Assembly: GCA_937625935.1 (NCBI GenBank) | Contig: OW569389.1 | Coordinates: 124,001-188,000 of the forward strand | Direction: 5' to 3' | DNA length: 64,000 nt | Source of the DNA: Tetramitus jugosus | Lineage: Eukaryota; Protista; Heterolobosea | Notes under the pieces: generated by a model | What the model was told of the DNA's origin: nothing | Databases searched by the model: none | What the model saw: the letters and a program-made list of their open reading frames with translations, nothing else | In this document: positions 1 through 58,778 of the stretch, one piece after another | Numbering within the stretch: position 1 is the first letter of the stretch | How the letters are laid out: the number at the start of each line of letters is the position of its first letter | Made by a program: the position numbers and the translations under genes

Positions 1-705
1 TGCACCTCACCAGTGTTGTATAGATCGTACAACTTCTGCTATGTGGAGTGTTCCACTGCGTACCTGTGCATGAAAACATTCCAACTTCCTGTCTATACCA
101 TGAGGGTATTTGAGGAAGCTAAAATCTGTACCACTATTGTTTGCTGCCCGCCAACGTCGGTGGTTGTGCTTCTTGCACGGTCCACCATGATTGCTCGGGC
201 AGCAATCTCTTTCTTGACTTTCTTGAACACCTCGGAGGTGTTCAATACTAGCTCGAGGATTGCTCTGTTACGAGCATCCTCATCAATGGTGTTGTTGGTT
301 GGCTCTTGGGTGACCGTAGTTGGAGTGGCGGGATGGGACTCCGGCATGATCGACTCCCAGTCATCGGTCGTAGACGGAGTCGAAGGTTCGAATTCGGAGA
401 TTCGCTCCGGCGTCCTTGGAGACGGGGATGCGAGGGGAATCCGGTTGACGGAAGCCATATCTTTTAACACACTGACTTGTTGTCTTTAAATGTTGTCATC
501 AACAACAGTTACCCACGCAACAAACCTCTTGGGGCCCTTCTTGATGACTTGGACCCTGGTGAGGAAATCACCAAAATCCAAGCCAATCTTCTTGGCCAAG
601 GCAGCCTTGGGGGAGTCATCACACTTTCCAGTGATGATGACCTCCTTGTTGCTTGGCGCAGTTCCTCTTGGTGCTGTGGTCCACACATTGAATTCCTTCG
701 TGCAC
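1..705 (-). mobile_element. 5'-truncated, internally deleted non-LTR retrotransposon copy inserted 38 bp upstream of tRNA-Glu; runs off the window start
   Basis: Minus-strand 486-705 encodes VWTTAPRGTAPSNKEVIITG...FVAWVTV, matching ORF1 at 56897. Segment 93-470 has NRAILELVLNTSEVFKKVKKEIAA, matching NRQILEQVNATSPVFARVKKEIAA of that ORF1. Segment ~1-145 reads DFSFLKYPHGIDRKLECFHAQVRSGTLH, matching the ORF2 C-terminus at ~6555-6640. Confidence 0.88.
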
Positions 706-826
706 TGCGAATCTGATATATCCCCTAAGGTGAATCTAATATATCCCATATAGTCTAGTTGGTTAGGATACATGGCTCTCACCCATGAGACCCGGGTTCG
801 AGTCCCGGTATGGGAGTTTTTGTTCC
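706..826 (+). repeat. Left arm of a 121-bp perfect inverted repeat (38 bp 5' flank + tRNA-Glu + 10 bp 3' flank); partner at 2638-2758
   Basis: Base-by-base reverse-complement identity with 2638-2758. Confidence 0.93.
744..816 (+). tRNA. tRNA-Glu (anticodon CTC)
   Basis: Cloverleaf: TCCCATA/TATGGGA acceptor stem, CATGG-CT-CTC-AC-CCATG anticodon arm, GGTTCGAGTCC T-loop/B box. T5 Pol III terminator at 817-821. Confidence 0.97.
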
Positions 827-954
827 TCTATCTTGGATAGAATGGAATTGAAACCTGTTTACATGTCTGTGATTACGGTTGCAGTGGATGCCCTGGGTAC
901 CCTTTTTCTTGGTAGAAGTATCAAGAAATGCTTTGAAATAAAGCTCTATCCGGG

Positions 955-1700
955 TCACTCGAGAACATTAAAGTGCTTTACATCCGCATCATCTTGAATC
1001 TCTTGCAGCTCCTTCATAACGTCTTGGTTGCCTGTGACACACGAACCAGAAAAAGAAAGGTTCTGAATAATTTCTGGTATATTATCATCATCCAATTCGC
1101 CATCAAGAATCACCAGAGATTCATCAAGCTCTGTTCTAGCCTTCTTTGCAGACGAGTCTCCACTATCTTCATCTTCTCTTAATCGCTTGATAGGACTTGC
1201 ATGTAATACAGAACTTGATACTTTGGAGGCTGATTGTTCCTTGGCTTGACACTCTTGTTCGAGAAGCTTGAGCTCATCTGCAATCTGGGAGATGTAAACT
1301 TGCTTGAACTCTTCCACTGCGACTCTCTTGTTTGCAACATTGTGAAGAGTGATACCAGGCTTGTTGGACTTAACTCTTCACACTTTCTTTCAGTTGAACA
1401 TGTTGCTCCTTCTTTACTGGGCATCGTTGCCATTCACACTTACCATCACATTTTATTGGTACACAGATTTTCGAATGACCAACGGCTTGCGGTTTGTGGC
1501 ATTTACTGCAGAATCTTGAACCGTTTGAGACTAAACTGTTATCATCTTGTTTTTTTGTGAATTATTATCTGCTGTCGATGATGATTGAGTTGGTGATTGT
1601 AGTGGTGATTGAGGTGGTTGAGTTTGTGATTGTGTTGATGAATGAGATGAAGAAGTAGCTGGTGATGGAGTAGAAGATTGAGTAATAGTTGTTTTACTAT
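955..1700 (-). pseudogene. Frameshifted gene remnant with Ser/Thr/Gln-rich N-terminus and Cys/His-rich segment, divergent from the transposase
   Basis: Broken minus-strand frames, including RFCSKCHKPQAVGHSKICVPIKCDGKCEWQRC and ORFs 955-1317 and 1179-1433. No family recognised. Confidence 0.3.
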
Positions 1701-1845
1701 GTGATGATTGATTAGTCAGTGGTTGATGTTGAGCTGACCAGTGCAGTCCTGAAATCTAAAATGAGTTGCCATGAGTTGTCTTGTTGTTTTTTCAATACGA
1801 CTTTCTTTTTGGCGGTTCAATTGTGCAGTGTTCAATAAACAAAAC

Positions 1846-2374
1846 ATGTCGAGAGGGCCACATAGGAGGAAGTCACCTGAACAACTGAAAACAACTGTTG
1901 ACTACTACAAACTACGATTCGCAGCAACACGTTCATTCATGAGAGGGATGCCAATGAATGAAGTTGTTGATATCTTCAAAGTTAGTGTTGGGCAGGTAAA
2001 GAATTGGATGAGGAAGCTAAAGGATCCAACTTTTCATTCAGGCAGGCATGGTGGATTTAGATGGTGTAAGTTGACAAGTCAAGACAAAGCTCATCTGTAC
2101 ATGCTTGGAAAACTGTACACACAGTCATCATTACAATCAATAGCAACTGTGCTTCAAAAGCTTACAGGAACCAAATGTGAGTACATTCACAATTTGCAGA
2201 TTCTATCAAAGTCTGGGATGGGGGTTCAAGAATGTCGAGTACAAACAAAAGTTAAAGTATACTGTGCAGAATGTGGATAGATGGTTTAATCACGTCAGAG
2301 GTATGCCTGAATTGGTGAAGAAGTATGGAATGAATAATATCAAGTACCTCGACGAAGGACATTTGGTGTTCTAA
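1846..2374 (+). pseudogene. IS630/Tc1/mariner-like transposase remnant (frameshifted, truncated)
   Basis: HTH-like MNEVVDIFKVSVGQVKNWMRK, second HTH SLQSIATVLQKLTG/VSTFTICRFYQSLGW across a frameshift at ~2177, then IKYLDE (first Asp of DDE), then a stop. Confidence 0.7.
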
Positions 2375-2647: not shown

Positions 2648-2720
2648 CTCCCATACCGGGACTCGAACCCGGGTCTCATGGGTGAGAGCCATGTATCCTA
2701 ACCAACTAGACTATATGGGA
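2648..2720 (-). tRNA. tRNA-Glu (anticodon CTC), identical to 744-816
   Basis: Exact reverse complement of 744-816; T5 terminator at 2643-2647. Confidence 0.97.
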
Positions 2721-2759
2721 TATATTAGATTCACCTTAGGGGATATATCAGATTCGCAA

Positions 2760-2778
2760 GGCATATCGAAAGAAAAAA
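2760..2778 (+). repeat. Target-site duplication GGCATATCGAAAGAAAAAA, left copy (right copy 7224-7242)
   Basis: 19-bp direct repeat flanking the element. The right copy follows the poly(A) tail directly. Confidence 0.92.
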
Positions 2779-2794
2779 GAAAAAAAAAAAAAAA

Positions 2795-5500
2795 ATGGAA
2801 ACAAATGCAAACATTCCATCCTCTCCGGGGGCAAGGGAGTACTCGCGTGACGGGTACGCAGTATGGACAGTACAGAACATTGGAAGTAGCATCAACAAAA
2901 AAGAAGTCGTGATCAAGGGTACACAGTGCCATAACACAGCACCAACAATTGCAAGAATGATTGGCTCAAGGTACAAGGAGTGGGTTACTCGTGCACATGT
3001 CAGAAGATGGGAGAAAGGCCAGTTTATTGCGTGGGTGAACGTGAAGGACGATAAACTCTATGAGTTTGCTGAGATGTTCAATGAGTCAAGAAGAATCGCA
3101 AACGCTCATGCATCCATCAAGAGAGGTCTTGACTCGGAGAAAAAACTTGTGGTTCACAAGGTCCTCGGCAGGTCAAAGGACGACATCGCTAAACTCATTG
3201 GAGAGGATAGAGTACATCACGTGGAAGTTAAGGGCAGCACAGCATTTGTCACGATGACATCCCAGTCATATGCTCATGCTGTCATTGGAAACAAGCGGAT
3301 TGGAGCAGAGATTAGCCCATATGTCCAGAGAAATCAAGATCCAATGAAACTAATGTCCAAGAAGATGCAAAGGATCACAGATTCCTTAAACAAGCAGATG
3401 GACGAGCTAAAGAGAAGAGTTGCACAACTGGAAACGAGCCTGAAGAAGGTTATGAACAAAAAAAGGAGTGGAAAAGTACATAAACCAAGGAGAGGAGAGC
3501 TTCAAAGAGTAGATGAAGTATCTGTTGAGTCACCAGACGATGACATTGCAATGCTAGAAGATGAAACAATCTCTGAACAAGATGGCTCAGACGCTGGAGA
3601 ACAAACTACTAGCGTTGCACCACCCGAGTTGGTAGAAGAAATGAATGTTGACGAGCCAATGGTACTCACAACTCCGGAAATAGAGCCACTAAGTGTTGAA
3701 GTAATAGGGGAGGGCACTACGATAGTTCAGGATCCAATACCTATGGGTGAAAATGAGAACACTGAAGCCCAGCTGCTTGAGGAGAGGAGGAAAATGTTAG
3801 TGAGAGCGAGAAGAGAGAAGAGACGGGAGCGCGCACTCTCAGATAGCCAACATTACAAATCAATCGGGGCTACGATTAGCAAATACGCTGTCCAAGGAAA
3901 GTTCATTTTAGGAGGTGATCATAATGCCGTTACAGCTGCTACTGACCGGTCCTCGAACAGAGTAGACGAAAACACGCCATTACTGCTGCAAATGTTGAAG
4001 GAGAACAACCTGTGTGACACCAATGAGGTAATGGGAGTAGAAAGATTCCATACATTCTTCCGCAGGAAGTCCTCGTCGAGAATAGATTCAGTATGGTGCA
4101 ACCAAGCAATAATAGAAGCAATTGACAAGGTAGAAATGTTCACATCCAATGGTGTACATAGCGATCATGTCCCTACTTTAGTCACGATAAAAGCCAGAAC
4201 TGGCACAAATACTGTGTATAGTGGAACGATGTTTAAGTTCCCCAAGGACAAGAAAGACCCTAGATGGGTCCATTATGGTAAGGAGCTCATCAGGGAGCTA
4301 GAAGGGAGTAGTGTAAGTGCAATAGAGGATGTAAATGAGCAGTGTCAAATTATAACATCCTCTATCATCAAACATGCTAAAGTGTTTGAAGTGGAAAGAA
4401 CAGTGAAGATGTGGAGCAACAATCGAAAAGTCAAGAGGTTGTTGAAAAACAGAGAAGTGCTGATTCGATACCTGTCGGATCGAAGATGGAGCAGTGCATT
4501 AGAAGCAGTGTGTGGATGGGAAATTGTCGGCTCTCGCAATGACAGAGCATGGGCTGCGATGAAACTTACTAGCGAGTCCTTGCACAGAGAGAGAGTACGC
4601 AAAGCCAATCAAAAGTTTAGAAAGTGGGAATGGAAGGCAAGAACATCCGAGTTCATTGATCCGTCCACCTTCTTCTCGGCATCTACCGCGAAGAAGAGCT
4701 CTCGAGTAAGGCTTTCTAGAGTGAAGAAGAATGGAATAGAGTACACAGATGAGGTCACAGTGGGTAACTTGGCTGCGGAGTACTTTGAAGGTGCCTTCTC
4801 CTCTGAGGTTGCCAACATGGATTATCTAAGAGCGTTAAAAAGTGATGGGCACAGAGCAACAATACACGAAGCATTCACCCCTATCACTACAGAGGAAGTT
4901 AGCAAAGCCATTGGTTGGCTAAGAAACCGTAAATGTCCCGGTGTTGACAAAATACATAATGAAATGCTGAAAGTCCCCATCACAAAAGAACGTGACTACA
5001 GGTATGATCTCTCAGAGATCCTTGCTGATTTCTTTAACAATATCACCAGACAAGGGATCTTTCCCAAAATGTGGAAAGAGGGGATAATTATCCCAGCATT
5101 CAAGAAGGGAGATACTTCTAATCCTGCCAACTACAGACCAATCTGTCTGTTGAGTACCGTATCAAAGCTGTACACCAAGTTAATCAACAGCAGGATCTCC
5201 AAGGCTGCAGAGACCGGTGGAATCTTCTCAAACGTGCAAGGCGGAGGCAGAAGGTTCAGGGACATTAGGGAAAAGCTTTCTATAATCAGAGGTGTCATTG
5301 ATCACGCCAATCGGAACAACAGACAACTGTTTCTGTTGCTGACAGATATATCAAAAGCCTTCGACTCGGTTCCTCACAACGCAATCCGGTCTGTCTATGA
5401 ATTTTTCGAGTTCCCGGACAACATCGTGCTCAGCGACGTGAGCAGCCAAGGCGATGTCAGAGGTGCTATCGTTTCTTCGCATGTCGATGCACCCCGATAA
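2795..5500 (+). CDS. In-frame fusion of retrotransposon ORF1 (RRM-like + coiled coil) with the C-terminal half of the APE endonuclease and N-terminal RT
   Basis: ORF1 homology up to ~3850, then HYKS...GKFILGGDHN...RIDSVW...SDHVP. The N-terminal EN motifs (WYNIRG, LQET) seen at 8134-8250 are absent. RT homology breaks off after DISKAFDSVPH. Confidence 0.85.
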   Translation: METNANIPSSPGAREYSRDGYAVWTVQNIGSSINKKEVVIKGTQCHNTAPTIARMIGSRYKEWVTRAHVRRWEKGQFIAWVNVKDDKLYEFAEMFNESRRIANAHASIKRGLDSEKKLVVHKVLGRSKDDIAKLIGEDRVHHVEVKGSTAFVTMTSQSYAHAVIGNKRIGAEISPYVQRNQDPMKLMSKKMQRITDSLNKQMDELKRRVAQLETSLKKVMNKKRSGKVHKPRRGELQRVDEVSVESPDDDIAMLEDETISEQDGSDAGEQTTSVAPPELVEEMNVDEPMVLTTPEIEPLSVEVIGEGTTIVQDPIPMGENENTEAQLLEERRKMLVRARREKRRERALSDSQHYKSIGATISKYAVQGKFILGGDHNAVTAATDRSSNRVDENTPLLLQMLKENNLCDTNEVMGVERFHTFFRRKSSSRIDSVWCNQAIIEAIDKVEMFTSNGVHSDHVPTLVTIKARTGTNTVYSGTMFKFPKDKKDPRWVHYGKELIRELEGSSVSAIEDVNEQCQIITSSIIKHAKVFEVERTVKMWSNNRKVKRLLKNREVLIRYLSDRRWSSALEAVCGWEIVGSRNDRAWAAMKLTSESLHRERVRKANQKFRKWEWKARTSEFIDPSTFFSASTAKKSSRVRLSRVKKNGIEYTDEVTVGNLAAEYFEGAFSSEVANMDYLRALKSDGHRATIHEAFTPITTEEVSKAIGWLRNRKCPGVDKIHNEMLKVPITKERDYRYDLSEILADFFNNITRQGIFPKMWKEGIIIPAFKKGDTSNPANYRPICLLSTVSKLYTKLINSRISKAAETGGIFSNVQGGGRRFRDIREKLSIIRGVIDHANRNNRQLFLLLTDISKAFDSVPHNAIRSVYEFFEFPDNIVLSDVSSQGDVRGAIVSSHVDAPR

Positions 5501-7094
5501 ACTTGAACTCTATGTTCGACAATTTGATGAGGATGGAGCCCACGATATAGAGGTAGATGGTACTGTTGTCCAGGCCCGAAACAGTGGTCATGGGTTCAGA
5601 GCACTGGGTCTCTTCACCAACCTGAAAGGTGACACGAAACAACAAGTGGTTCAAGCGTGGAACAAATCACAAAGAGTAGTGAACCGACTGAAGATGATGA
5701 AGCTGACACCGCGACAGGTGGCAAGGATCGTAAACACCTGTATACACCCTATCTTCAAGTACTCGTCAGAATTCACCGACTGGACTGCTGGGGGACTTCT
5801 CAGAGTGAACAGACTGGGAAGGATGCTGGTCAAACATGGCTCAAGAGCGATGTCACAGTTTCCTTCCGAGTTACTGTCGGTCAGTAGCGATCGTGGATCA
5901 GTGGGTCTCAATGACATAGAGGAAACTATAACCGCACAAACCGCCTGGTTTATTGGATCAATGGTGTCTGGTAAGAGGGACACGGAAGCGAAGCAGTTGC
6001 TGCTTGACACGCTTGAGGAAATCAAGCACACACAAACATTCCAAAATGAGAATGTCTTCCAGTCAAGCAACCGCCTCGAGTACGTCAAGAACACTTACCT
6101 TAAGTGGTGTGCACAAAGGATGCACACCCAAGGCATTACACTTAACAATGGGTGCATCCACCGCAATTGTGACGATTGTAACATTGCCCGGTATGTTCCA
6201 ACAACTATTCTCAAGAAGCTGTTCAAGGGTGGAATCACTAACAGAAATCAGCTGATGGTTGGTGTGAGAGTCATGAGTTTAAAGGAGATCAAAAACAAGT
6301 TCCCAGGATGCAAGATTGGACCAAGGTCTCATGAGTTGTTGACAATAATGGTGTCACAAATGAATGAATGTGAGTGCATTTCGACGTTAGAGACTAACGC
6401 CAGAGTCTCTGTAGAGCAAACTTTGATGATAGGACAATATCCCGTCGAGAGCAGAGAGCAAATACAGTTGCGAATGGAGCATCAGAGACTTTGCAGGATT
6501 AAAGAGATTGATGGTCTGTGGTGGTTACAAGTTGAAGCGATGGATGGTGGGGTGGACTTTAGTTTTCTAAAGTACCCCCACAAGATTGACAGAAAGCTGG
6601 AGTGGTTCTATGCACAAGTGCGCAGTGGTACTTTGCACACTCGAGAAGTCATGAGAGTATTGTATGGAAAAAATGAAGCTCCAACCGTGTGTGAAAGATG
6701 TAACAAGGAGTCGGAGACTATTCTACATTGTCTCATTCGCTGTCCACGAGCCATATTGACTAGAAGAAGACTGGCTATGTCGGTGGGTGATGAACTGAGT
6801 GGTCTGGGAGTCCACCCAAAACACAAGATAGACCTATGGTTCGACTCGGTGTGTTGGAAAGGAGGTAAGATGAGTGTGCAACCAAACCGAAAATCGAGCA
6901 AAGAGTTCCTCCTAGGTATGATGGGTGTAGAGAAGGAAGCAGTGGATCAAATTATGAGAGGGATGAGGAAGAACGGAATCAAGAAAGATATTGCGGAAAA
7001 GAGAGCCAGAACATTTGTGAACAAGGTGAAAAGGAGGTGCGTCGAAACCCTTCACCAATTGTACACCTCCTATAAGGAAGGAACAAAACAATGA
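5454..7094 (+). CDS. C-terminal part of retrotransposon ORF2 (late RT/thumb + zf-RVT CCHC)
   Basis: MSMHPDK and FRALGLF (RT motifs 6-7), WFYAQVRSGTLHT, CERCNKESETILHCLIRCP. No YADD-type motif in either frame. Confidence 0.85.
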   Translation: MSEVLSFLRMSMHPDKLELYVRQFDEDGAHDIEVDGTVVQARNSGHGFRALGLFTNLKGDTKQQVVQAWNKSQRVVNRLKMMKLTPRQVARIVNTCIHPIFKYSSEFTDWTAGGLLRVNRLGRMLVKHGSRAMSQFPSELLSVSSDRGSVGLNDIEETITAQTAWFIGSMVSGKRDTEAKQLLLDTLEEIKHTQTFQNENVFQSSNRLEYVKNTYLKWCAQRMHTQGITLNNGCIHRNCDDCNIARYVPTTILKKLFKGGITNRNQLMVGVRVMSLKEIKNKFPGCKIGPRSHELLTIMVSQMNECECISTLETNARVSVEQTLMIGQYPVESREQIQLRMEHQRLCRIKEIDGLWWLQVEAMDGGVDFSFLKYPHKIDRKLEWFYAQVRSGTLHTREVMRVLYGKNEAPTVCERCNKESETILHCLIRCPRAILTRRRLAMSVGDELSGLGVHPKHKIDLWFDSVCWKGGKMSVQPNRKSSKEFLLGMMGVEKEAVDQIMRGMRKNGIKKDIAEKRARTFVNKVKRRCVETLHQLYTSYKEGTKQ

Positions 7095-7242
7095 TGCCCT
7101 GCGGGCACCATTGTTAGAATTAAGAAGTAATGGAGGAGATAACGCTCTTTGAGCGTTATCCATTGTAAATATTCAGATAATAAAACAGAGCAACCAGCTG
7201 GTTGTATTAAAAAAAAAAAAAAAGGCATATCGAAAGAAAAAA

Positions 7243-9240
7243 CGATGTCAAACACACAAGTACAGGCGGTGGTGATACGTCGCAACCACTGTTCAGTGTG
7301 GTCGCTTATCAGAAAGAAGCAGCTGCAAAGACCAATGAAATTGTCATTAGTGGCAACTGCAACGGTCATTCAAGAGCGCAAGTCAACAGAATTGGAGAGA
7401 GATTCCTAGAGCAAAAAATGATGTTGTGATTGTTGGAGGAGCCAAGTCGGCGCTTGCGGAAATCGAAAAATGGGCGGGAAAAGAGAACATAAATGGAGTA
7501 GAGATGCGCGGAAACTCTGCGATTGTATCCACCAAGGGTCCGACTTATGCACAGGTGATGATGGAGAAGCAGCCCTTGGAGAACACAAGAGTAAGACCAT
7601 TTGTTCACCGAGAGCCTGATAGAGCGCTACAGATGAAACACTCTATGGCATCACTTCAGCAGCAACTCAACGACATGACTGACAGGTACAGAATGTGTAT
7701 GAAGGACATCCATGCACTTAAGAGAGAAGTCTCTAAGTTGAACGGGTTGTTCAAAGGGTTAGCAAAGAGCTCAACAGCTAGAAATGAACTACCAGCTCGC
7801 CAGAGTGAACCAATAGTTCAACAGAGTGAACCAATACAGCAAATTGAACCACCAATTCAACAGAGTGAAGATATTGGAGAAACCGAGATCCGGACAGAGT
7901 GTTCTCACCGATTGAGGGGATTCAAGAAGAGTCGTCAGACAGCAATCACTAAGATGTTCCCTAATTTGAAGACTCCTGAAAGGCGAGGTAAGAAGAGGGA
8001 CGCCGAAGAAAATGAGAGGGAAGAGGAACCCAACAGAGTTCATTCATGTATCTGCTACACCAAAGGGCACAGTTCATGTTCACAAAACTGTACCGGCAGT
8101 GATCATAGAACACGAGAGCGACAGTGACTTTGAATGAGTATCGCAGTAATGTGGTACAACATTCGGGGCATAAGGAGAAAGCGCAATGACATCATTGCTT
8201 TACTCCAATCTTGCCCCTAAGTCGACGTTCTAATGCTACAGGAAACTGAGTGTTCGAACGCATCAATTATTGAGTCCTTCAGGAGACAACTTGAGATGAA
8301 TGGATGTCTTCTGGTGAACAATAAGCCCGAGGACAGGGTTTTGTCCATCATCAAAATTGAGAGAGTGAAGGAGCATAGAGTTTTGTACAATGACGAAAGA
8401 ACACAGGTGATTCAAATCGCTTGTAATGAATTAGGGATCATCTTGGTGAACCACTATGGTCCTCACAAAGGCACTGAAGGAGTTGTCCATTACAAGAATC
8501 TGATTGAAGTTCATAGAGGAGTGGAATGCCAAGGAAAGTTTGTATTAGGAGGAGACCACAACACGGTTTCAACATCAGTGGACATAAGCTCAAGAATATG
8601 GATCCTAATAGCAGTCATGTCACTGTATATGTATCTGCGAGGTTTCTCCTCCGTTCTGGGATAACCAGGAACTCACTGTTTGATGACGATGGTGTCATGG
8701 CAATAACATACGAAGAGGTGAAGAAAAGGTTCAAAATGAAAGGAATCGGACGAGTCAAGTAGATGAGAATACGGGCCTATATGGAACTTCTCGGCAAGCC
8801 GTGTGATGAGACATTTCTTGCAAGACGAAGAGTGCAGAGAGAATTGGTTGTAACGGTGAAGGATGCTAGAATTGACAATCCTAACAGAAAGTTTAAGAAG
8901 GCTAGAGTTGAGGCAATTGCAAATAAGAATTGGTTGGAATCTGAAATGTCGAAGGAAAAGGAATGGAACCACTTTTTGAGTCCATTCGGCCTAGAAAGGA
9001 AAGAACTTTGGTTCTATCATCAATTCAGGAGTGGTACACTTCACACTAAGATGATGATGAGGATATTGTACAATACCAGTTTAGATGAAAAGTAAACTGT
9101 GGTGCTGCACCGGAGAGCATATTACATTTGTTGGTGGAGTGTGACGATGCCATTATAGCTAGAAAGAAACTCGTAGAAGAGATAATAAATTGGATAGATT
9201 AATGCTACCTGACAGGACTGATCGGAATCATGACTCACTG
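7243..9240 (+). mobile_element. Older degenerate copy of the same retrotransposon family, stacked directly behind the TSD
   Basis: Frameshifted ORF1 (SVWS...EIVISGNCNG; 7426-8127 RRM/coiled coil). ORF2 starts at 8134 with MSIAVMWYNIRG...(stop at 8218)...LQETE...GGDHN. A deletion then joins to the C-terminus WFYHQFRSGTLHT...ILHLLVEC. Confidence 0.85.
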
Positions 9241-9900
9241 CAGTGTTGTATGGAAAAAAAATTTCCTCGAGGAGCCAAAGCCCGGGTCTGAGAGAGCAAG
9301 GACAGCCGGTACAAGGCAATTGCAATGAAATTCGAAGGATGGTTGATGAGAGTGCAAGTCACAAGAGGGGCAAGGAGAGATTTATCGTTTGGGCAAATGT
9401 CAAAGAGTTGTATGAATTTGTTGAAATGTTCAACAAAGAAGGTGGCAGCGGAAACAAATGCAGTCGCCATAATATGCTCAAGCCGTCATGGAGACAAAGG
9501 ATAAAAAGAATGGATTTGTTAGCAAGTATCAAGAAAGTTTATTGACACACAAATGGTCAACAGACCATTCAGAAAGAGAATGTACATGATGAAAGACGAA
9601 CTTATGGAAATGATCGGGAGCCTGAAGAGAAAAGTCAGCACTCTGGAAGAAACATTTAAGGAACTATCCAGTGACAGACACAAGAAAGGCAAGCGTGGTT
9701 CAAGTAAAAATGACCTTGAAAAGCAAGAGGAATGCAAGGATCAACCATGGATTTAAGCAATGACGCGGAACCTTCCACACCAACTAGGAGAAGCAAGGAG
9801 TTGGTGCGGCTGAGAGCAGACTCAGCCCAGAGGGAAAGATTCATCACCAACGTTTTGAAGAGTACACTTGAAAAGCACTGACACCTAAAAACAAAAACGG
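9240..9900 (+). mobile_element. Third stacked, degenerate ORF1 remnant
   Basis: RGKERFIVWANVKELYEFVEMFNKE and KRMYMMKDELMEMIGSLKRKVSTLEE match ORF1 at 2795 and 56897. Confidence 0.75.
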
Positions 9901-11099
9901 TAAGAGTAGCAAGATATGATTGGCTTTCAAGATACACAATCAAGAAAACAAGAAAGACACCTCCCAGATTGGCTAGTGTGAGAAAGGTTGCTGAAGTAGG
10001 ACAGGACATCCGGTAAGCTGGACTAAATTCAAAATTGGTCTAGGCGACCGGATTACTTGATGTACAGGAAGTGCTAGGCTTGACAAGGTTCCACACATTC
10101 TGCAGTCAAGGATCATCCAGACTCGACTCGGTGTTTTGGAACCGACAGGCGATATAGAAAGCATGGGAGTCGGTGCTACCCAAAATGGAATAAGAGGAGA
10201 CTATCTGCCAATTGAAGTCAGATTGACAACAGCCAATACCACACAAGGTAAGAACATTGTGTTGCTGAATCAAAAGAGGATGTTGAGAGAATAGCACGAC
10301 ATGAATAGAGCCCTGTCTAGTTTGATTTGCGTGAGACTGTCCGGAGAGAGAATCGAAGATCACGACATTATTGTTGCCAATACGAGAGTCCCAGCAAAAA
10401 AAACCGAAGTGCATTTTCGTGCGTTAGTCCTCAACCTAAATCGTAAGAAGGAACAGCAAGTAAGTCTATCAATTTGAGAACTTCTCTGAAACAGTCGGAC
10501 ACAACGGGCCTCCATCGGTCAACATGAAAAAAATGAAAAAAATTGAACACACAAGCAACAATTTAGCAAAACCTTACTGAAACATCCATTTGACAAGAGT
10601 TTGAAATTGGGTGTGTATCAAGAGTACTTGACCAGCCGCTCTCAATACATTATTGCTCGATAACAAGCGCATTGCTTCCAATCAAGGCCTAAAAATTAAG
10701 AAGTACATTGATCTTAGTTTTGTATATAGATACATCTTTGTTCAGAGAGAGCTATGAGTAGATACATCTCAGCAAGGTGTTTGCTGCCTCACAAGTAACA
10801 GATTCAATATACTTGTTGAACGATCAGTTAGTCAGACACAGCCTTAAAGGCATTTAAATCAAGTATTGCTTACAGGTATTTTGATGTATACAAGCCCCAT
10901 GCTCAACTCTGCTGTGTTGTTCTACGAGAAAGAAAATCACAACATGCAAAGACTAAAGAGTGTTCAAAAAACTTTATGAGTGGTGTCTGAGAATGTGCGA
11001 AGATAAGATTCAATCACTAAAATGCGATCCGACACCATCTGATTTGAATTCTGATAGTAGAGTTATTTTTTAAACCAGATTATATCAGAGGGAAGATGG

Positions 11100-11700
11100 G
11101 AAGGAGCATTCAAGATGTCTAGACTCGTTAATGATTTGGAAAATATGAATCAAACAAACAAACATCAATTCCGTTACAATGAGGATGTCACACTCTATGC
11201 TCATTGGTTGCTCAATTATATGGGTAAGTCAAAGCATCAGATGCTTTTGGGTGTGAAAGAGAAGGAAGACGGCTGCAGAAGATTAATGACATACTACCTG
11301 TCAGTTTATAAGAGCAACAACGTCGATCAATGATAACAGAAACAGGAGTCTATGATCAATATATTCATCTGTGCTCAGAGCTGAGTCGTAACCTTGATAA
11401 GTTTCCAAATTGTTGGACCCTAATGATAGACTCGGTAGATCTACAGGTCAACTTAACAGTAAGTAGAGACAAAGGAAATATATTTGTCATTAGTGCTTCA
11501 TCAATTCAGATGAAGCAAACTACTCAGCAGTTGTGCAGATTATTTAGGAAAGAACGGCAGAAACTCACTTCTGGATGGAACAATCTTGGTGCCAGTACAT
11601 GCAATGAAAATTATATCTACCAATGATATGACTGTGCCAAAGAAGTGCGTACAAGAAGGTGTAAATTTTCTAACAGTCACAATCACAGACATTGATAGAC
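11100..11700 (+). pseudogene. Possible degenerate DNA transposase (P-element/THAP9-like) remnant
   Basis: Broken ORFs with FRYNEDVTLYAHWLLNYMGKSKHQML and CWTLMIDSVDLQVNL loosely resemble the THAP9-type N-terminal region and first catalytic Asp; weak. Confidence 0.25.
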
Positions 11701-12059
11701 TAGTTCATATCGAGATGTTCATTCCAGGTGCGAAACCAAAGATGCTGTTCAGAGGAAGTTTCTCAGTTGGTTCTTGCGACCTGCACTTTAAGTACGAATC
11801 TGATTGCGTACACTCAAGTAAGGAGAATAGAATTAGTTTTAGTATATATTGGTGAAGACGTGGTGTTCCAATCATCTGACAGACTATCTCTTGATTGTAC
11901 AGGTTATAGATGTCAATGGACACAGTTAGAGTAACATTTCAGAATGTAGAGCATTCACTTTATTTGAAGCATGAGCGAAATTGCTTCAAATACATAATCA
12001 ATGTTGTTCGGTGGACTCCACTCAGTGAAACGAGTAGTACTCAAAAGTCACTTGAAGAG

Positions 12060-12310
12060 AAACTGCTTGGTGCAGTACCTCTTGGGGTTGTGGTCCACAC
12101 AGCATAGCGTGGGTTCTCATACTCACGAACAACAGGGGGTGTGTTCGTTTTTTCATCGGCACTATTTCTTGAAACGTACTTTTGGACTAGATAGAAGGAA
12201 ATGTAGTTCTACCACCAGGTCATGCAGAAGCTGTATAATGCCCTAGGTGATACTACATGTTCTCTTTGTGGCAAAAGCCCCGAGACCATCATTCATCTGC
12301 TGGTTGAAGA
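12060..12310. mobile_element. Scrambled fragments of the same retrotransposon family
   Basis: 12062-12108 (minus) reads YAVWTTTPRGTAPSS, an ORF1 segment similar to 650-690. ~12160-12310 (plus) reads FLKRTFGLDRR...CSLCGKSPETIIHLLVE (zf-RVT region). Confidence 0.7.
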
Positions 12311-13010
12311 TGGCTCTATCGACAATGCCTTGTCAACTACTCATATCTCGACAGTAATCAATCACAGATACAGCTATCCCACTAGAGATAAATACAACGT
12401 TCAGAGTAATGTCGCTACGGTAGCACTAGTCAATATTTGTGATCTCGATTACTCAACACGGCTGCAAAACGACCGGTAATGCAAGCATGGCACAACAACT
12501 CAGAATACTGTGATAATCATTTCCAGATCAAGTAAGGGAGCTCCCTCAAATGAATAGATTTTTCTAAAAAGGATATCTGTGAACTCTGTGTAGTTCAAAG
12601 TTGGTGTGATGAGGTTGTTCAGGTGATGGACGCTGTCTTTGTCTTACAGAGCCAACCCTGACAACATGGGAGGTCATAAACACTCAAAAATAGGGTCGAT
12701 CTTTTAACAGAATATTGGAGCATCGATGATTCCTCGAATCATTGAGAAAAGGAAATATCAGCAATACTAATTTTTGGGAATGGGCGACCTAGGGGATCAC
12801 TCTGTTAGGAGGATTAACAAAATCGTAAGTACCAGTCCGCTGTACCCTCTCTTTATTTCACATCGATCTTGTTGTGTTGGAAGAAGCTCATTATCCAACT
12901 GCAAATCAAACCTATGGAGTGCGCACTTTCGGTTGTGCTGACGCAACATTCATGAGTCAGATGAAAACATATTGATCTTCACTGGTAGCACCAACATTGC
13001 CAAATCTCTC

Positions 13011-52070: not shown

Positions 52071-52136
52071 TAGTAATATCGGGCATTTCAAAACTTAAGA
52101 CATCTTTTAACTTATAAAGAAAATTCCTCATTGACT

Positions 52137-56727: not shown

Positions 56728-56752
56728 AAATAAAGTTAATGATTCCAAAACA

Positions 56753-56824
56753 GGGGACAACGGAGAATCGAACTCCGGACCTCTCGCACCCAAAGCGAGA
56801 ATCATACCACTAGACCATTGTCCC
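56753..56824 (-). tRNA. tRNA-Pro (anticodon TGG)
   Basis: Reverse complement GGGACAATGGTCTAGTGGTATGATTCTCGCTTTGGGTGCGAGAGGTCCGGAGTTCGATTCTCCGTTGTCCCC folds as a cloverleaf; TTTT follows. Confidence 0.97.
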
Positions 56825-56853
56825 TTCATGTTCTAAAAATCATGAAAAATAAC

Positions 56854-56868
56854 CCAAAAATTATATTC
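56854..56868 (+). repeat. Target-site duplication CCAAAAATTATATTC, left copy (right copy 58203-58217)
   Basis: 15-bp perfect direct repeat; the right copy follows the poly(A). Confidence 0.92.
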
Positions 56869-58202
56869 AAAAAAACGCAGAAAAAAACGGAATCACATGT
56901 TTGGTGATTCAACAAATTTGGTGAAGGAATACGGCAACAGCCGTTATGCAGTGTGGACCACTGCACGGAAAGGCTCTAGGCCAAGCGACAGAGAGGTGGT
57001 CATTACTGGCAACGGTAATGGTGTCTCTCAGTCATCTTTGGCAAGAAAGATAGGAGAGGAGTTTGGTGACTGGCTCAACCGAGTCCAGGTCATCAAGAGG
57101 AAAGGCCAGCAACACTTTGTTGCATGGGTGACGGTCAAGGGTGACCGCATCTATGACTTTGTTGAGTTGTTCAACAAAGAGAGGAGGATTGGCAACAGCA
57201 CTGCTGCACCCAAGCGCAGTGTTGATTGCACAAGAAAGGTGGTCGTCCATGGCATGAAGAACATGTCAGTGGACGACATCAAGAAGCTACTGGGACCTGA
57301 GAAGGTTGCCAGTGTGCTCAAGAAGCGTGACACTGCTTTCGTGGTCATGGGTGATGAAACCTATGCACGGGCAGTGCTCAGTGGAGAGAACAAGGTCAAG
57401 GCCACGGTCACTCGATACGTCGAGAGACCACATGATCCTCTCAAGGCTGTCAACAAGAGGTTGACCAAGATGTACGAGGAGCTGCTGACGGTGGTTGACG
57501 CACTGCGTCGACAGGTCACAGAACTCACCAAGGAATTGGGAAAGACAAAGGGTCAAGGGGGCAACAAACCGGTTCCAATGCCGGAACAAGAAGTTACCCA
57601 AGCCACTGCTAGGATGGAGACTACTCCTGAGCTAGTGGAGGCAGAAGAACAGAGGACTGTAGCAACACCACTGCCATCAGTGCCTGTTGTACAGCTCAGT
57701 GCTGAGAACCGGCAAATTCTGGAGCAAGTGAATGCCACTTCTCCAGTGTTCGCCAGAGTGAAAAAGGAAATTGCTGCATTGGCGCTGGCTGCTGCACGCA
57801 AAAGGTATGGTTTGACTGAGGACGAACCAGTCATTGTGGATGTGGATGATGACTCCGAAAAGGAGATTCAGAGTCCACAACTCAATGAAAACAAGAAGAG
57901 GAGTGCCAGGATCACACTGGGTGATCTGATGAGCAACAAGGCCCAAAACAAGAAAAAAACAACAGATGGCTCTGTGTCCATCGACGGTCCTACTACAAGG
58001 TTACGCTCTTTGATGAAGGGCATCAACCAAAACACTCACCAGAGTGATTATTCCAACCTGTAGATGCACCGTCGGGGACAACAAGAGAAGAAGAGTGAAT
58101 GACGCCCTACGGGTCGTCACTCACAAAACAAGTCAATAAATGAGCAACCGTGTGCTTGCTGCGCAAGCACACATGGTTGTATGGAACAAAAAAAAAAAAA
58201 AA
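56869..58202 (+). mobile_element. Intact ORF1-only non-autonomous retrotransposon (1334 bp), 44 bp upstream of tRNA-Pro
   Basis: 15-bp TSD, poly(A) at 58188-58202, AATAAA at 58135, hairpin 3' end shared with 2779-7223, single ORF1, no EN or RT. Confidence 0.92.
56897..58063 (+). CDS. Retrotransposon ORF1 protein (RRM-like + coiled coil), 388 aa
   Basis: Colinear with the N-terminus of ORF 2795: YAVWT, EVVI.G, F.AWV.VK.D..Y.F.E.FN..RRI.N, K.VVH, TAFV.M, YV.R..DP.K. Confidence 0.9.
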   Translation: MFGDSTNLVKEYGNSRYAVWTTARKGSRPSDREVVITGNGNGVSQSSLARKIGEEFGDWLNRVQVIKRKGQQHFVAWVTVKGDRIYDFVELFNKERRIGNSTAAPKRSVDCTRKVVVHGMKNMSVDDIKKLLGPEKVASVLKKRDTAFVVMGDETYARAVLSGENKVKATVTRYVERPHDPLKAVNKRLTKMYEELLTVVDALRRQVTELTKELGKTKGQGGNKPVPMPEQEVTQATARMETTPELVEAEEQRTVATPLPSVPVVQLSAENRQILEQVNATSPVFARVKKEIAALALAAARKRYGLTEDEPVIVDVDDDSEKEIQSPQLNENKKRSARITLGDLMSNKAQNKKKTTDGSVSIDGPTTRLRSLMKGINQNTHQSDYSNL

Positions 58203-58217
58203 CCAAAAATTATATTC

Positions 58218-58427
58218 CTCAAAAATTGGAAGAGGATAATCCTATGAGGAGATGTGTCGAGGGCTTCGCCTCTTCACATGATCCAGGAGATGGTTGGTTG
58301 CTGATGCTCTGCGAGCAACAAACAATGCAACAGTGACGGCATTCTGCCGTCAAATACGAAACAGTTACATCATGTAAGGAGAATCAACAACGAATAAACA
58401 GCACAACCATTGGTTGTATTAAAAACA
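58218..58427 (+). mobile_element. Older, severely 5'-truncated insertion (3' UTR only) stacked upstream of tRNA-Pro
   Basis: Hairpin array, AATAAA at 58393, ACAACCA-T-TGGTTGT-ATT then an A-run. Probable TSD AAAAATAACYCAAAAATT at 56845-56862 and 58428-58445 (1 mismatch). Confidence 0.75.
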
Positions 58428-58778
58428 AAAAATAACTCAAAAATTCAATTGGCCGGAGGAAAGCCACATGTGAACTTGTTAGAAGACACGGCAATATGTT
58501 GAGATAGAAGGCACGGTAACATGTTGAGAGAACTGGAAGTACTGAGATGCAATGGGAGACATAATAACAATAGCACCCCAGCTCATGTTTAAGGATAATT
58601 TCGATAGATATCTGGCAGTGGCGCATGATGGAGGTGTTTGGAGGTGATGCATCGCCTCTTCACAAGCTCCAAAGAACTTGAGGTTGTTAATGCTCTGTGA
58701 GTGCAAGTACAGAGAACAACAAAGAAATGCAAGTGCAACCAAGTGGTTTTTTTAAAAAATTGTAAATTTTAGTCACAC

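What the first reader, a model, noticed from the sequence alone, without database searches (positions are those of the whole stretch)
1..58445. A tRNA-gene-targeting non-LTR retrotransposon family: all 3 tRNA genes carry oriented insertions 38-58 bp upstream
Seen in sequence: members of one family begin 38 bp (705, tRNA-Glu #1), 58 bp (2779, tRNA-Glu #2) and 44 bp (56869, tRNA-Pro) upstream of a tRNA gene, plus an older insertion at about -38 of tRNA-Pro. All have the 5' end facing the tRNA and point away from it. The TSDs (GGCATATCGAAAGAAAAAA versus CCAAAAATTATATTC) share no clear motif beyond A-richness, and two isotypes are hit, so targeting looks position-specific, not sequence-specific. 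I recognised no copy in the intervening ~43 kb of host genes. Established: Dictyostelium TRE5 elements insert about 50 bp upstream of tRNA genes in this orientation via ORF1-TFIIIB contact, and yeast Ty1/Ty3 target Pol III genes independently. Inference: this is a safe-harbour targeting system in an apparently non-dictyostelid, heterolobosean-like genome, possibly an undescribed convergent origin.
Basis: partly seen in the sequence, partly recalled or inferred. Interest (0 to 1): 0.93.

Follow-up and report, generated by a model that had tools for sequence, protein, structure and literature searches.

The report
LINE family targeting Pol III genes
This small amoeba-type genome, probably a heterolobosean, holds a large and apparently young family of jumping genes that insert about 44 bases in front of tRNA and 5S RNA genes, always head-to-head, which is the behaviour known so far only from the TRE5 elements of Dictyostelium.

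Summary

**In the window.** All three tRNA genes have a non-LTR retrotransposon upstream, with its 5' end facing the gene. The junctions lie 38, 58 and 44 bp from the gene.

**Genome-wide (26.35 Mb).**
- I examined 30 copies of the 1.33-kb ORF1-only member.
- 20 lie 40-46 bp upstream of tRNA genes of at least 14 isotypes.
- 3 lie 38-40 bp upstream of dispersed 5S rRNA genes.
- 5 lie behind the poly(A) of another family member, forming stacks.
- 1 lies beside a tRNA remnant, and 1 is an outlier at about -5.
- TSDs are 12-19 bp and share no motif.

**The element.** The autonomous form encodes ORF1 (tandem RRM plus coiled coil) and ORF2 (APE, RT, CCHC). It also has a conserved 3' motif and a poly(A) tail.

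**The host.** It is very probably a heterolobosean and not a dictyostelid. The evidence is the best named HSP90 hits and a mitochondrial-type GspF gene.

**Relatives.** The ORF2 clade has none closer than about 29% identity among 1.84 billion representative proteins, apart from unnamed fragments from short contigs of other assemblies.

**Comparison with TRE5.** The distances, the orientation and the roughly 5-nt shift between tRNA and 5S targets all match Dictyostelium TRE5. I could not test whether this is convergence or shared ancestry, because no TRE sequence was available.

The scan had already noted the same system in other windows of this genome.

The parts
1..705 (-). Copy 1. It belongs to ORF1 subfamily B, is 5'-truncated and internally deleted, and runs off the window start. 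Its 5' junction is 38 bp upstream of tRNA-Glu #1.
   Evidence: tblastn finds ORF1 residues 17-85 at 692-489, residues 185-308 at 548-156, and ORF2 residues 1090-1131 at 144-19. The ORF1 pieces are 93-97% identical to subfamily B.
744..816 (+). tRNA-Glu(CTC) #1, the target gene of copy 1.
   Evidence: ARAGORN. Rfam tRNA, 66.6 bits.
2648..2720 (-). tRNA-Glu(CTC) #2, the target gene of the stack at 2779 to about 12500.
   Evidence: It is an inverted duplicate of #1, with 126-nt arms that are 98% complementary.
2760..2778 (+). Upstream TSD copy of copy 2 (GGCATATCGAAAGAAAAAA).
   Evidence: It repeats exactly at 7224-7242.
2779..7223 (+). Copy 2, a defective ORF2-bearing member. It has ORF1, then ORF2 lacking residues 1-111 and 641-726, then the CCHC region, the 3' motif and poly(A).
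   Evidence: tblastn finds ORF1 at 2834-3448, and ORF2 residues 112-640 at 3842-5428 and residues 727-1274 at 5442-7091. Pfam finds RVT_1 and a weak zf-RVT match. The 3' end reads GCAACCAGCTGGTTGTATT followed by A15.
7224..7242 (+). Downstream TSD copy of copy 2.
7243..9260 (+). Element 3, an older and internally deleted member. It has ORF1-like sequence, the N-terminal part of APE and an ORF2 C-terminal fragment, and ends in GTTGTATGG plus poly(A).
   Evidence: ORFs. tblastn finds ORF2 residues 2-150 at 8140-8595 and residues 1085-1133 at 8931-9074. The 3' end is shown.
9261..12500 (+). Element 4, degenerate family debris. It has an N-terminal ORF1 fragment at 9295-9464 and a CCHC-like ORF at 12222-12479. 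Its 3' limit is uncertain.
56753..56824 (-). tRNA-Pro(TGG), the target gene of copy 3 and of the older remnant.
56854..56868 (+). Upstream TSD copy of copy 3 (CCAAAAATTATATTC).
   Evidence: It repeats exactly at 58203-58217.
56869..58202 (+). Copy 3, a complete 1,334-bp non-autonomous member (subfamily A). It has a 28-nt 5' UTR, an intact ORF1 (56897-58063, 388 aa), the 3' hairpin motif and poly(A).
   Evidence: 30 copies elsewhere in the genome are 92-100% identical over the full length.
58203..58217 (+). Downstream TSD copy of copy 3.
58228..58436 (+). Older 5'-truncated remnant, consisting only of a 3' end that finishes in ACAACCATTGGTTGTATTAAAAA. It is flanked by CTCAAAAATT at 58218-58227 and 58437-58446.
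   Evidence: Read directly from the sequence. The 3' motif is the one shared by the family.

Best explanation
**What it is.** This is a diverse family of APE-type non-LTR retrotransposons (LINEs) that integrates by target-primed reverse transcription at a fixed place upstream of RNA polymerase III genes.

**Shown: anatomy.**
- The autonomous form has ORF1 and a 1,274-aa ORF2 carrying APE, RT and CCHC domains.
- The ORF2 start codon overlaps the ORF1 stop codon (ATGTTAA), and ORF2 is in the -1 frame.
- Every subfamily ends in AATAAA, then GCAAC, a variable stretch, GTTGTAT and poly(A).
- Many deletion derivatives exist. One is a 1.33-kb ORF1-only element that keeps its ORF intact.

**Shown: insertion site.**
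- Insertions are flanked by duplications of about 16 bp.
- The duplicated target segment spans about -28 to -44 from the mature 5' end of tRNA genes, and about -22 to -39 from 5S rRNA genes.
- The element's 5' end always faces the gene.
- The target sequences share no motif.

**Inferred: mechanism.**
- tRNA and 5S genes use different internal promoters and share only TFIIIB and Pol III upstream of the start site.
- The 5-6-nt offset between the two gene types is about the length expected for a tRNA leader.
- The duplicated segment is therefore centred near -31 from the transcription start, which is where TBP sits within TFIIIB.
- I propose that the ribonucleoprotein docks on promoter-bound TFIIIB, through ORF1p (as reported for TRE5-A) or through ORF2p.
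- In this model the endonuclease nicks the tRNA-sense strand on the gene-proximal side of the TBP site and primes cDNA synthesis on the poly(A). The second nick falls about 16 bp further out.
- The asymmetry of TFIIIB would fix the orientation.
- The conserved 3' motif would be the reverse transcriptase's recognition site. It would let deletion derivatives use ORF2p supplied in trans.

**Consequence.** In a gene-dense genome the insertions land in a harmless place, and repeated hits at one gene build head-to-tail stacks.
For: **tRNA genes.**
- 21 of 30 ORF1 loci have a divergent tRNA about 71 nt before the ORF1 ATG.
- Mapping the TSDs of 23 copies gives 25-30 nt from the tRNA to the proximal TSD edge and 40-46 nt to the distal edge. 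For 5S genes the values are 21-24 and 38-40. The median TSD is 16 bp.

**5S genes.** They are confirmed by Rfam at 100 bits and are dispersed in at least 47 copies. At least 8 have a family member head-to-head upstream, found by matching the coordinates.

**Other subfamilies.** Six more 5'-truncated ORF2 copies from other subfamilies abut tRNAs head-to-head.

**Sampled nuclear tRNAs.** 19 of 53 have a member upstream. I saw none in any other configuration.

**No target motif.** Information content is below 0.7 bit at every target position.

**Independence from gene length.** The spacing stays the same for tRNA genes of 71-87 nt.

**Domains.** Pfam finds APE at residues 5-201 and RT at 533-751, with a weak zf-RVT match. 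The ORF overlap is shown. ORF1p folds as a tandem RRM plus a long helix.

**3' motif.** It is present in about 40 distinct 3' ends. The outer stem GCAAC/GTTGT is invariant and the inner part varies.

**Selection on ORF1.** 29 of 30 ORF1-only copies keep an intact ORF, and dN/dS is 0.25-0.29.

**Stacks.** The TSD of a subfamily-A copy directly abuts the 5' end of a B-type element in four loci.

**Literature.** TRE5 inserts 40-54 bp upstream of tRNA genes and 37-41 bp upstream of 5S genes, in the opposite orientation, and its ORF1 protein binds TBP, Brf1 and Bdp1 (PMC5911963).
Against: **No protein contact was tested.**
- Which element protein does the targeting is therefore unknown.

**The start-site argument rests on an assumption.** The tRNA leader length in this organism is assumed and was not measured.

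**Some insertion positions deviate.**
- Copy 2 in the window sits at -58.
- The older remnant at tRNA-Pro sits at about -54.
- One subfamily-A copy sits about 5 bp from tRNA-Thr (L010).
- So the spacing is not absolute and may differ between subfamilies.

**The 3' stem is not supported by covariation.** It is invariant, so its structure has no covariation evidence behind it.

**There is no direct evidence of current transcription or mobility.** The only trace is that soil metatranscriptome contigs share some of the element's words.

**The two U6 genes are unoccupied,** but with n=2 this says little.
Confidence: 0.72

Rival explanations
1. The behaviour is the same, but the cause is common descent. 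On this reading the family is a true, very divergent member of the TRE5 lineage. It would either be inherited from a very old ancestor or have been transferred horizontally between soil amoebae (dictyostelid to heterolobosean or the reverse). It would not be a convergent invention.
For: - The numbers match TRE5 almost exactly: 40-46 against 40-54 bp for tRNA genes, and 38-40 against 37-41 bp for 5S genes.
- The orientation is opposite to the gene in both.
- Both have ORF1 plus an APE-RT-ZF ORF2 in an overlapping -1 frame and an A-rich tail (PMC5911963).
- Both hosts are bacterivorous soil amoebae. Metagenome runs from soil, rhizosphere and groundwater hold the element's words.
Against: - An exhaustive HMMER search of 1.84 billion representative proteins found nothing closer than about 29% identity apart from fragments of this lineage itself. 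The 12 proteins of that list that carry a source name or a NCBI/UniRef record were not from Dictyostelium.
- The clade from this genome sits on a stem of 1.36 substitutions per site.
- The 5' UTR is 28 nt long and has no A or B modules.
- Spaller et al. found no TRE-like elements in Physarum, Acanthamoeba or Protostelium, so the lineage is not known even in other Amoebozoa (PMC5006619).
- Even within dictyostelids, a position like that of TRE5 arose independently in NLTR-B.
Confidence: 0.3
2. Targeting works through DNA shape and needs no protein tether. On this reading the endonuclease prefers the sharply bent, minor-groove-widened DNA on either side of TBP within TFIIIB, and no specific protein-protein contact is needed.
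For: - The two nicks lie about 8 bp on either side of the inferred TBP position.
- There is a weak T/A preference just before the proximal nick, as with L1-type endonucleases.
Against: - TBP also bends Pol II promoters, yet no copy was seen at one. All 30 subfamily-A copies are at Pol III genes or in stacks.
- Strict orientation is easier to explain by docking on an asymmetric complex.
Confidence: 0.12
3. The tether is to Pol III itself or to TFIIIC, not to TFIIIB. Ty1 integrase, which binds AC40 and other Pol III subunits, is the precedent.
For: Pol III, like TFIIIB, is common to tRNA and 5S genes. Ty1 shows that such a tether exists (PMC5911963).
Against: - Ty1-type tethering gives a broad, nucleosome-phased window of about 1 kb. 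Here the window is a few base pairs wide and lies inside the TFIIIB footprint.
- TFIIIC binds inside the genes at distances that vary with gene length, yet the spacing does not change with tRNA length.
Confidence: 0.1
4. There is no targeting at all. On this reading either insertion is random and copies survive only in harmless places, or the tRNA-element units spread by segmental duplication.
For: The genome is gene-dense, so selection against genic insertions must be strong.
Against: - Selection cannot produce a precision of about 3 bp and a single orientation.
- Each copy has its own TSD, and the TSD flanks the element alone.
- The flanks are unique, and at least 14 tRNA isotypes plus 5S genes are involved.
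Confidence: 0.01

Closest known systems
TRE5 elements (TRE5-A/B/C) of Dictyostelium discoideum and the TRE5-like elements of other dictyostelids
   Same: - It is a non-LTR element with ORF1 and an ORF2 carrying APE, RT and zinc-finger domains. The ORFs overlap, ORF2 is in the -1 frame, and the tail is A-rich.
- It inserts 40-54 bp upstream of tRNA genes and 37-41 bp upstream of 5S genes, in the opposite transcriptional orientation.
- Non-autonomous deletion derivatives are common.
- It lives in a compact amoeba genome (PMC5911963, PMC5006619).
   Different: - The host belongs to a different eukaryotic supergroup (heterolobosean-like, not Amoebozoa).
- No sequence relationship is detectable beyond generic LINE similarity.
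- The 5' UTR is very short (28 nt) and has no A/B/C modules.
- The 3' end carries a conserved GCAAC...GTTGTAT motif.
- ORF1p is a tandem RRM plus coiled coil. The TRE5-A ORF1 protein is described as being of unknown function.
- The 5S targets here are dispersed chromosomal genes, not genes on an extrachromosomal rDNA element.
NLTR-B of Polysphondylium (Heterostelium) pallidum
   Same: A non-LTR element that sits 39-64 bp upstream of tRNA genes. It is considered independent of the TREs, so it sets a precedent for this position evolving convergently (PMC5006619).
   Different: [quoted passage not shown] The element here has APE-RT-CCHC in a single ORF2.
Ty3 (and Ty1) of Saccharomyces cerevisiae
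   Same: These are safe-haven insertions upstream of Pol III genes, guided by the Pol III machinery. Ty3 integrase uses TFIIIB.
   Different: They are LTR elements with an integrase. Ty3 inserts 1-4 bp from the start site in either orientation, and Ty1 inserts within a window of about 1 kb.
HAL1 (half-L1) elements of mammals
   Same: A non-autonomous LINE derivative that keeps only ORF1 and multiplies to many copies. Copy 3 and its 30 or more relatives are of this type.
   Different: It belongs to a different LINE lineage. Here the ORF1 stays intact in 29 of 30 copies, with dN/dS of about 0.27. I did not identify the autonomous partner of subfamily A.
Sequence-specific Tx1-group LINEs that insert within tRNA, 5S or snRNA genes (Dewa, Mutsu, Keno). 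I cite these from my own knowledge of Kojima and Fujiwara 2004.
   Same: They are APE-type LINEs associated with multicopy small-RNA genes.
   Different: Those elements insert at a specific sequence inside the gene or repeat unit. The element here inserts at a fixed distance outside the gene, and the target has no motif.

Membership tests
TRE5 (tRNA-gene-targeted retroelement, 5' type) | Non-LTR element with ORF1 and an ORF2 carrying APE, RT and zinc-finger domains, with ORF2 overlapping ORF1 in the -1 frame | tested here: met
   Pfam finds APE at residues 5-201 and RT at 533-751, with a weak zf-RVT match and a CX2CX8HX4C motif. The overlap reads ATGTTAA, and ORF2 is in the -1 frame.
TRE5 (tRNA-gene-targeted retroelement, 5' type) | Integration 40-54 bp upstream of the mature tRNA coding sequence, in the opposite transcriptional orientation | tested here: met
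   The distal TSD edge lies 40-46 nt from the tRNA in 20 copies, all head-to-head. The window copies lie at 38, 44 and 58.
TRE5 (tRNA-gene-targeted retroelement, 5' type) | Integration 37-41 bp upstream of 5S rRNA genes | tested here: met
   Three copies lie at 38-40 nt. At least 5 more 5S genes are occupied head-to-head, judged from coordinates.
TRE5 (tRNA-gene-targeted retroelement, 5' type) | The RT or ORF2 groups with the TRE clade in a phylogeny | not testable with these tools
   No TRE sequence could be fetched. Indirectly, the nearest library proteins are at most 29% identical, and the clade from this genome stands alone on a long stem.
TRE5 (tRNA-gene-targeted retroelement, 5' type) | The host is a dictyostelid social amoeba | tested here: not met
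   The best named HSP90 hits are heteroloboseans at 74-77% identity, with no amoebozoan in the top 120. A GspF homologue with two T2SSF domains lies on nuclear contig C5.
TRE5 (tRNA-gene-targeted retroelement, 5' type) | Modular untranslated regions (A and B modules at the 5' end, B and C modules at the 3' end) | tested here: not met
   The 5' UTR is about 28 nt. The 3' UTR is about 120 nt and carries a hairpin motif.
TRE5 (tRNA-gene-targeted retroelement, 5' type) | The ORF1 protein binds TFIIIB subunits | not testable with these tools
APE-type LINE with L1-like architecture | N-terminal APE endonuclease, central RT, C-terminal Cys/His motif, poly(A) tail and variable-length TSDs | tested here: met
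APE-type LINE with L1-like architecture | The ORF1 protein has RRM-type RNA-binding domains and a coiled coil | tested here: met
   The AlphaFold model has pLDDT of 66-90 (10-residue block means) over residues 10-220. It shows two beta-alpha-beta-type domains followed by a helix at 181-220. Foldseek matches tandem-RRM proteins at E down to 1e-6. The alignment behind the model is shallow (5 sequences).
ORF1-only non-autonomous LINE derivative (HAL1-like) | A discrete element that encodes ORF1 only, has its own 5' and 3' ends, and is amplified to many copies | tested here: met
   30 full-length 1.33-kb copies are 92-100% identical, and 29 have an intact ORF.
Sequence-specific small-RNA-gene LINEs (Tx1 group) | Insertion at one specific sequence inside the target gene or repeat | tested here: not met
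   The insertions lie outside the genes, and the target sites share no motif.

The most novel reading that the evidence does not exclude
On this reading a LINE lineage in Heterolobosea (Discoba) independently evolved the same solution as Dictyostelium TRE5. That solution is oriented integration on the TFIIIB-bound segment upstream of Pol III genes, with the same 5-nt offset between tRNA and 5S targets. If so, promoter-bound TFIIIB would be a recurrent, almost deterministic landing pad for target-primed reverse transcription in compact genomes. The geometry of the two nicks, about 8 bp on either side of TBP, would be set by the complex and not by the ancestry of the element.
Probability: 0.5. 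Interest if true: 0.75.

Novelty: new member of a known kind. Interest (0 to 1): 0.62.

Why it matters
**Known range so far.** LINEs that integrate at a fixed position upstream of Pol III genes have been described only in dictyostelid amoebae. A full-text search found no report for Heterolobosea.

**What a second system offers.**
- It is abundant and well preserved. Many copies have intact ORFs and crisp TSDs.
- It lies in a different eukaryotic supergroup.
- It therefore gives an independent test of the idea that TFIIIB is the landing pad.

**The new geometric clue.** The 16-bp duplicated segment sits at the same distance from the inferred start site of both tRNA and 5S genes. That fits a docking site centred on TBP.

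**Practical points.**
- The family should be added to repeat libraries for heterolobosean genomes, where reported TE contents are very low.
- It also explains much of the structure around tRNA and 5S genes in this assembly.

Tried and rejected
**Steps that failed or were blocked.**
Later genome-search runs gave coordinates only. The genome-wide cross-matching was therefore done by eye from coordinate lists, and its counts are lower bounds.
So there is no test of expression or of empty-site polymorphism. Local scripts still read locus L001, which covers them. In the one script that scanned the window itself I masked them.
- The SSU rRNA search gave no answer.

**Host identification.**
- The look-up of encoding contigs found no record of the window's ORF1.
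- A 1,014-aa host ORF and DDX24 gave only distant or unnamed hits.
- Pfam CcmF/CcmC was absent, which is inconclusive.
- The organism name is coded in the run list.
- The published genomes I checked do not match in size, contig number or GC content: Echinamoeba silvestris, the six genomes of PMC11702301, and Acrasis.

**Relationship to TRE5.**
- No TRE sequence is reachable with these tools.
- The RT alignment in the supplement of PMC5006619 is not held as text.
- The ESM Atlas gave nothing usable for ORF1 and only generic LINE clusters for ORF2.
- A maximum-likelihood tree with the mixture model did not finish, so I used FastTree.

**Readings rejected.**
- That the tRNA is part of the element.
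- Segmental duplication.
- Random insertion followed by selection.
- Sequence-specific targeting.

**Other.**
- Covariation support for the 3' hairpin: the stem is invariant, so there is none.
- Complex prediction was not run, because no host TFIIIB sequence could be referenced.

Full report
**1. The observation.**

ARAGORN and Rfam agree on three tRNA genes in the window:
- tRNA-Glu(CTC) at 744-816 (+)
- tRNA-Glu(CTC) at 2648-2720 (-)
- tRNA-Pro(TGG) at 56753-56824 (-)

Each has a retroelement on its 5' side, with the element's 5' end facing the gene.

The tRNA-Pro copy spans 56869-58202.
- It has a 28-nt leader, an intact 388-aa ORF1 and a poly(A) tail.
- It is flanked by CCAAAAATTATATTC at 56854-56868 and 58203-58217, so its junction is 44 bp from the tRNA.

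The copy at tRNA-Glu #2 spans 2779-7223.
- It is flanked by GGCATATCGAAAGAAAAAA at 2760-2778 and 7224-7242, so its junction is at 58 bp.

The two tRNA-Glu genes are an inverted duplicate that share 38 nt of upstream flank.
- At gene #1 that flank runs straight into a 5'-truncated ORF1 on the minus strand.

The three ORF1s are homologous.

tblastn with ORF1 and a full ORF2 finds no family member between 12.2 and 56.9 kb.

- The older remnant after the tRNA-Pro copy (58228-58436, TSD CTCAAAAATT) corresponds to about -54 in the ancestral site, not -38.
- The segment from 7243 to about 12500 is a same-orientation stack of at least two more degenerate members.

**2. The genome-wide test.**

The window is G000:C46:124001-188000 in a 26.35-Mb assembly of 56 contigs.

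Family size (all counts are lower bounds):
- ORF1 of the tRNA-Pro copy has at least 110 matches.
- A second ORF1 subfamily has at least 122 matches.
- The C-terminal half of ORF2 has at least 83 matches at 38-100% identity, about a dozen of them inside open frames of 1,200-1,318 aa.

The 30 best ORF1 loci are all full-length copies of the same 1.33-kb ORF1-only element, 92-100% identical. I oriented them and mapped their duplications, with this result:

| Position of the copy | Number |
|---|---|
| Upstream of a tRNA gene (at least 14 isotypes, genes of 71-87 nt) | 20 |
| Upstream of a 5S rRNA gene (Rfam 100 bits) | 3 |
| Beside a truncated tRNA remnant | 1 |
| Directly behind the poly(A) of another family member | 5 |
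| About 5 bp from a tRNA-Thr (outlier) | 1 |

The distances to the Pol III gene are tight. The duplication is 12-19 bp long, with a median of 16.

| Target | Gene to proximal TSD edge | Gene to distal TSD edge |
|---|---|---|
| tRNA | 25-30 nt (median 28) | 40-46 nt (median 43-44) |
| 5S | 21-24 nt | 38-40 nt |

Further support:
- Six 5'-truncated ORF2-bearing copies of other subfamilies also abut tRNA genes head-to-head.
- Of 53 nuclear tRNA genes sampled by Rfam score, 19 have a family member upstream and head-to-head. The same holds for at least 8 of 47 dispersed 5S genes. I saw no other configuration directly at a gene. These counts come from matching coordinate lists by eye and are lower bounds.
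- The two U6 genes are unoccupied.
- The reconstructed empty sites share no motif. Information content is below 0.7 bit at every position, with only a weak T/A preference just before the proximal nick.

So the targeting is real, and it depends on position and orientation and not on sequence. It extends to 5S genes, which the window itself could not show.

**3. Anatomy.**

I read a complete ORF2 from two overlapping loci of contig C34.
- It is 1,274 aa from its ATG.
- Pfam finds an APE endonuclease at residues 5-201, RT at 533-751 and a weak zf-RVT match over a CX2CX8HX4C motif.
- Its ATG overlaps the ORF1 stop (ATGTTAA), and ORF2 is in the -1 frame.

ORF1 has no Pfam family and no usable Atlas neighbour. 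Its predicted structure shows:
- two RRM-like domains at residues 10-175, with pLDDT block means of about 66-90
- a 40-residue helix at 181-220
- a disordered tail
- Foldseek matches to tandem-RRM proteins at E down to 1e-6

About 40 distinct 3' ends from all subfamilies share one pattern: AATAAA, a few bases, GCAAC(C), a variable stretch of 3-35 nt that is self-complementary when long, (G)GTTGTAT, and then poly(A).
- The outer stem never varies, so covariation cannot support the fold.
- Its conservation across ORF2s that differ by 60% points to a recognition site for the reverse transcriptase.

Deletion derivatives are the rule.
- Copy 2 in the window lacks ORF2 residues 1-111 and 641-726.
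- Copy 1 is an ORF1 fragment joined to an ORF2 C-terminal fragment.
- The ORF1-only element keeps an intact ORF in 29 of 30 copies, with dN/dS of 0.25-0.29. Its ORF1 has therefore been under purifying selection while the element spread.

**4. The host.**

- The best named hits of cytosolic HSP90 are Willaertia (77 and 75%), Naegleria (75 and 74%) and Acrasis (74%). Plants and green algae score about the same, and no amoebozoan is in the top 120. Metatranscriptome contigs match at 99-100%.
- DDX24 gives Acrasis as the named hit with the highest identity.
- Following a lead from earlier notes of this scan, I found a 486-aa open frame on nuclear contig C5 with two T2SSF (GspF) domains above Pfam's cut-off.
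- Homologues of the mitochondrial type II secretion system are reported only from certain heteroloboseans, jakobids, malawimonads and hemimastigotes (abstract of 10.1101/790865).
- A Pfam search for CcmF/CcmC found nothing, which I regard as inconclusive.

I conclude that the host is very probably a heterolobosean and is not a dictyostelid. Its name stayed hidden.

**5. Relatives of the element.**

- An exhaustive HMMER search of 1.84 billion representatives with ORF2 residues 1-1030 found a few fragments at 39-64% identity on short, unnamed NCBI and ENA contigs.
- After those, nothing exceeded about 29% identity. The named hits at that level are arthropod and lizard LINEs.
- In an RT-domain tree of 129 sequences, all ORF2s from this genome plus one such fragment form a clade with SH-like support of 100. 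Its stem is 1.36 substitutions per site, and it has no supported sister.
- A metagenome contig carries a 92%-identical ORF1-only copy about 43 bp from the 5' half of a tRNA-Ile. A more distant relative lies 76 nt (ATG to gene end) from a 5S-like fragment.

**6. Mechanism.**

Shown: integration leaves a poly(A) tail and a duplication of about 16 bp, as expected for target-primed reverse transcription by an APE-type LINE.

It follows that the nick used as primer is at the gene-proximal edge of the duplicated segment, on the tRNA-sense strand. The second nick is about 16 bp further from the gene.

Inferred:
- tRNA and 5S genes have different internal promoters (TFIIIC alone, or TFIIIA plus TFIIIC). 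Upstream of the start site they share only TFIIIB and Pol III.
- The spacing does not depend on tRNA length.
- The 5-6-nt offset between tRNA and 5S targets equals a plausible tRNA leader.
- Measured from the start site, the duplicated segment is then about -23 to -39 for both gene types. It is centred near -31, where TBP sits in TFIIIB.
- I therefore favour docking of the ribonucleoprotein on promoter-bound TFIIIB, with the asymmetry of the complex setting the orientation.
- Which element protein makes the contact is unknown. For TRE5-A it is ORF1p (PMC5911963).
- Repeated hits at the same gene explain the stacks. In four loci the duplication of a subfamily-A copy directly abuts the 5' end of an older B-type element. 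In the window, copy 2 abuts element 3 in the same way.

**7. Comparison with known systems.**

The review table in PMC5911963 gives the following for TRE5:
- 40-54 bp upstream of tRNA genes
- 37-41 bp upstream of 5S genes
- opposite orientation
- ORF1 plus an APE-RT-ZF ORF2 in the -1 frame
- an oligo(A) tail
- ORF1 binding to TFIIIB

The element here matches every behavioural feature that I could test.

It differs in several ways:
- the host
- the absence of modular UTRs
- the 3' motif
- no detectable close sequence relationship

Spaller et al. found no TRE-like elements outside dictyostelids. They also showed that a similar position arose independently in NLTR-B (PMC5006619). Full-text searches found no report of such elements in Heterolobosea.

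Membership in the TRE5 lineage cannot be claimed. The phylogeny could not be tested, and the host and UTR features are not met. 'Works like TRE5' is well supported.

**8. Limits.**

I worked beside those positions afterwards and sent none of their letters to any search tool.
- There is thus no direct evidence of present-day transcription or insertion polymorphism. The case for recent activity is indirect: intact ORFs, intact duplications and 97-100% identity among the youngest copies.

**9. Verdict.**

- It is a new member, in a new supergroup, of a known kind of system. Whether its origin is convergent is open at about even odds.
- The scan had already noted the same system in at least eight other windows of this genome. 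Those notes concern the same family and are not independent support.

Noticed in passing
window 701-826 and 2638-2763; spacer 827-2637: The two tRNA-Glu(CTC) genes are a tail-to-tail inverted duplicate, with arms 98% complementary. They are separated by 1.8 kb. The spacer holds an ORF (1771-2280) that looks like a helix-turn-helix domain of a transposase. It has only about 4 weak or degenerate relatives in the genome.
   Followed up: partly
window 28833-32746 and 39244-43708: There are two pairs of tandemly duplicated host genes. Their DNA identity is 74-98%, and the repeat spacing is about 2.58 kb and about 2.37 kb. The second pair includes an RCC1-BTB protein.
   Followed up: no
G000, many contigs: 5S rRNA genes are dispersed as at least 47 nearly identical single copies. 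They are not in a tandem array or on an rDNA unit. Several serve as landing sites for the LINE family.
   Followed up: partly
G000:C54 and G000:C56: These two contigs carry the same tRNA genes at identical coordinates (941, 12773, 14364, 14438, 44585). They are probably the same organellar genome assembled twice.
   Followed up: no
G000:C5:324247-325095 (-): A 486-aa open frame carries two T2SSF (GspF) domains above Pfam's cut-off. This fits a mitochondrial type II secretion system, which is a marker of a few protist lineages including heteroloboseans.
   Followed up: partly
L010 (G000:C24:419083-423246): One ORF1-only copy lies only 3-5 bp from tRNA-Thr(AGT), with a poor 8-bp duplication. It is the single outlier among the 30 copies and is unexplained.
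   Followed up: no
L029 (G000:C50:200369-204514), locus 2726-2782: One copy sits at the usual distance from a tRNA-like remnant that lacks its first 8 positions (Rfam 33 bits, model positions 9-63).
   Followed up: partly
L057 (contig RCUT01010319.1) 1-110; L059 (Ga0256771_1020205) 230-350: Environmental contigs carry relatives in the same arrangement. One is a 92%-identical ORF1-only copy about 43 bp from the 5' half of a tRNA-Ile(TAT). The other is a more distant, internally deleted copy 76 nt (ATG to gene end) from a 5S-like fragment.
   Followed up: partly
L031 (JGI sample 3300062347, contig Ga0606064_0121): An unnamed JGI contig encodes the closest DDX24 (61% identity over the core) next to RCC1-repeat genes. 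This suggests a related but distinct protist in public data.
   Followed up: no
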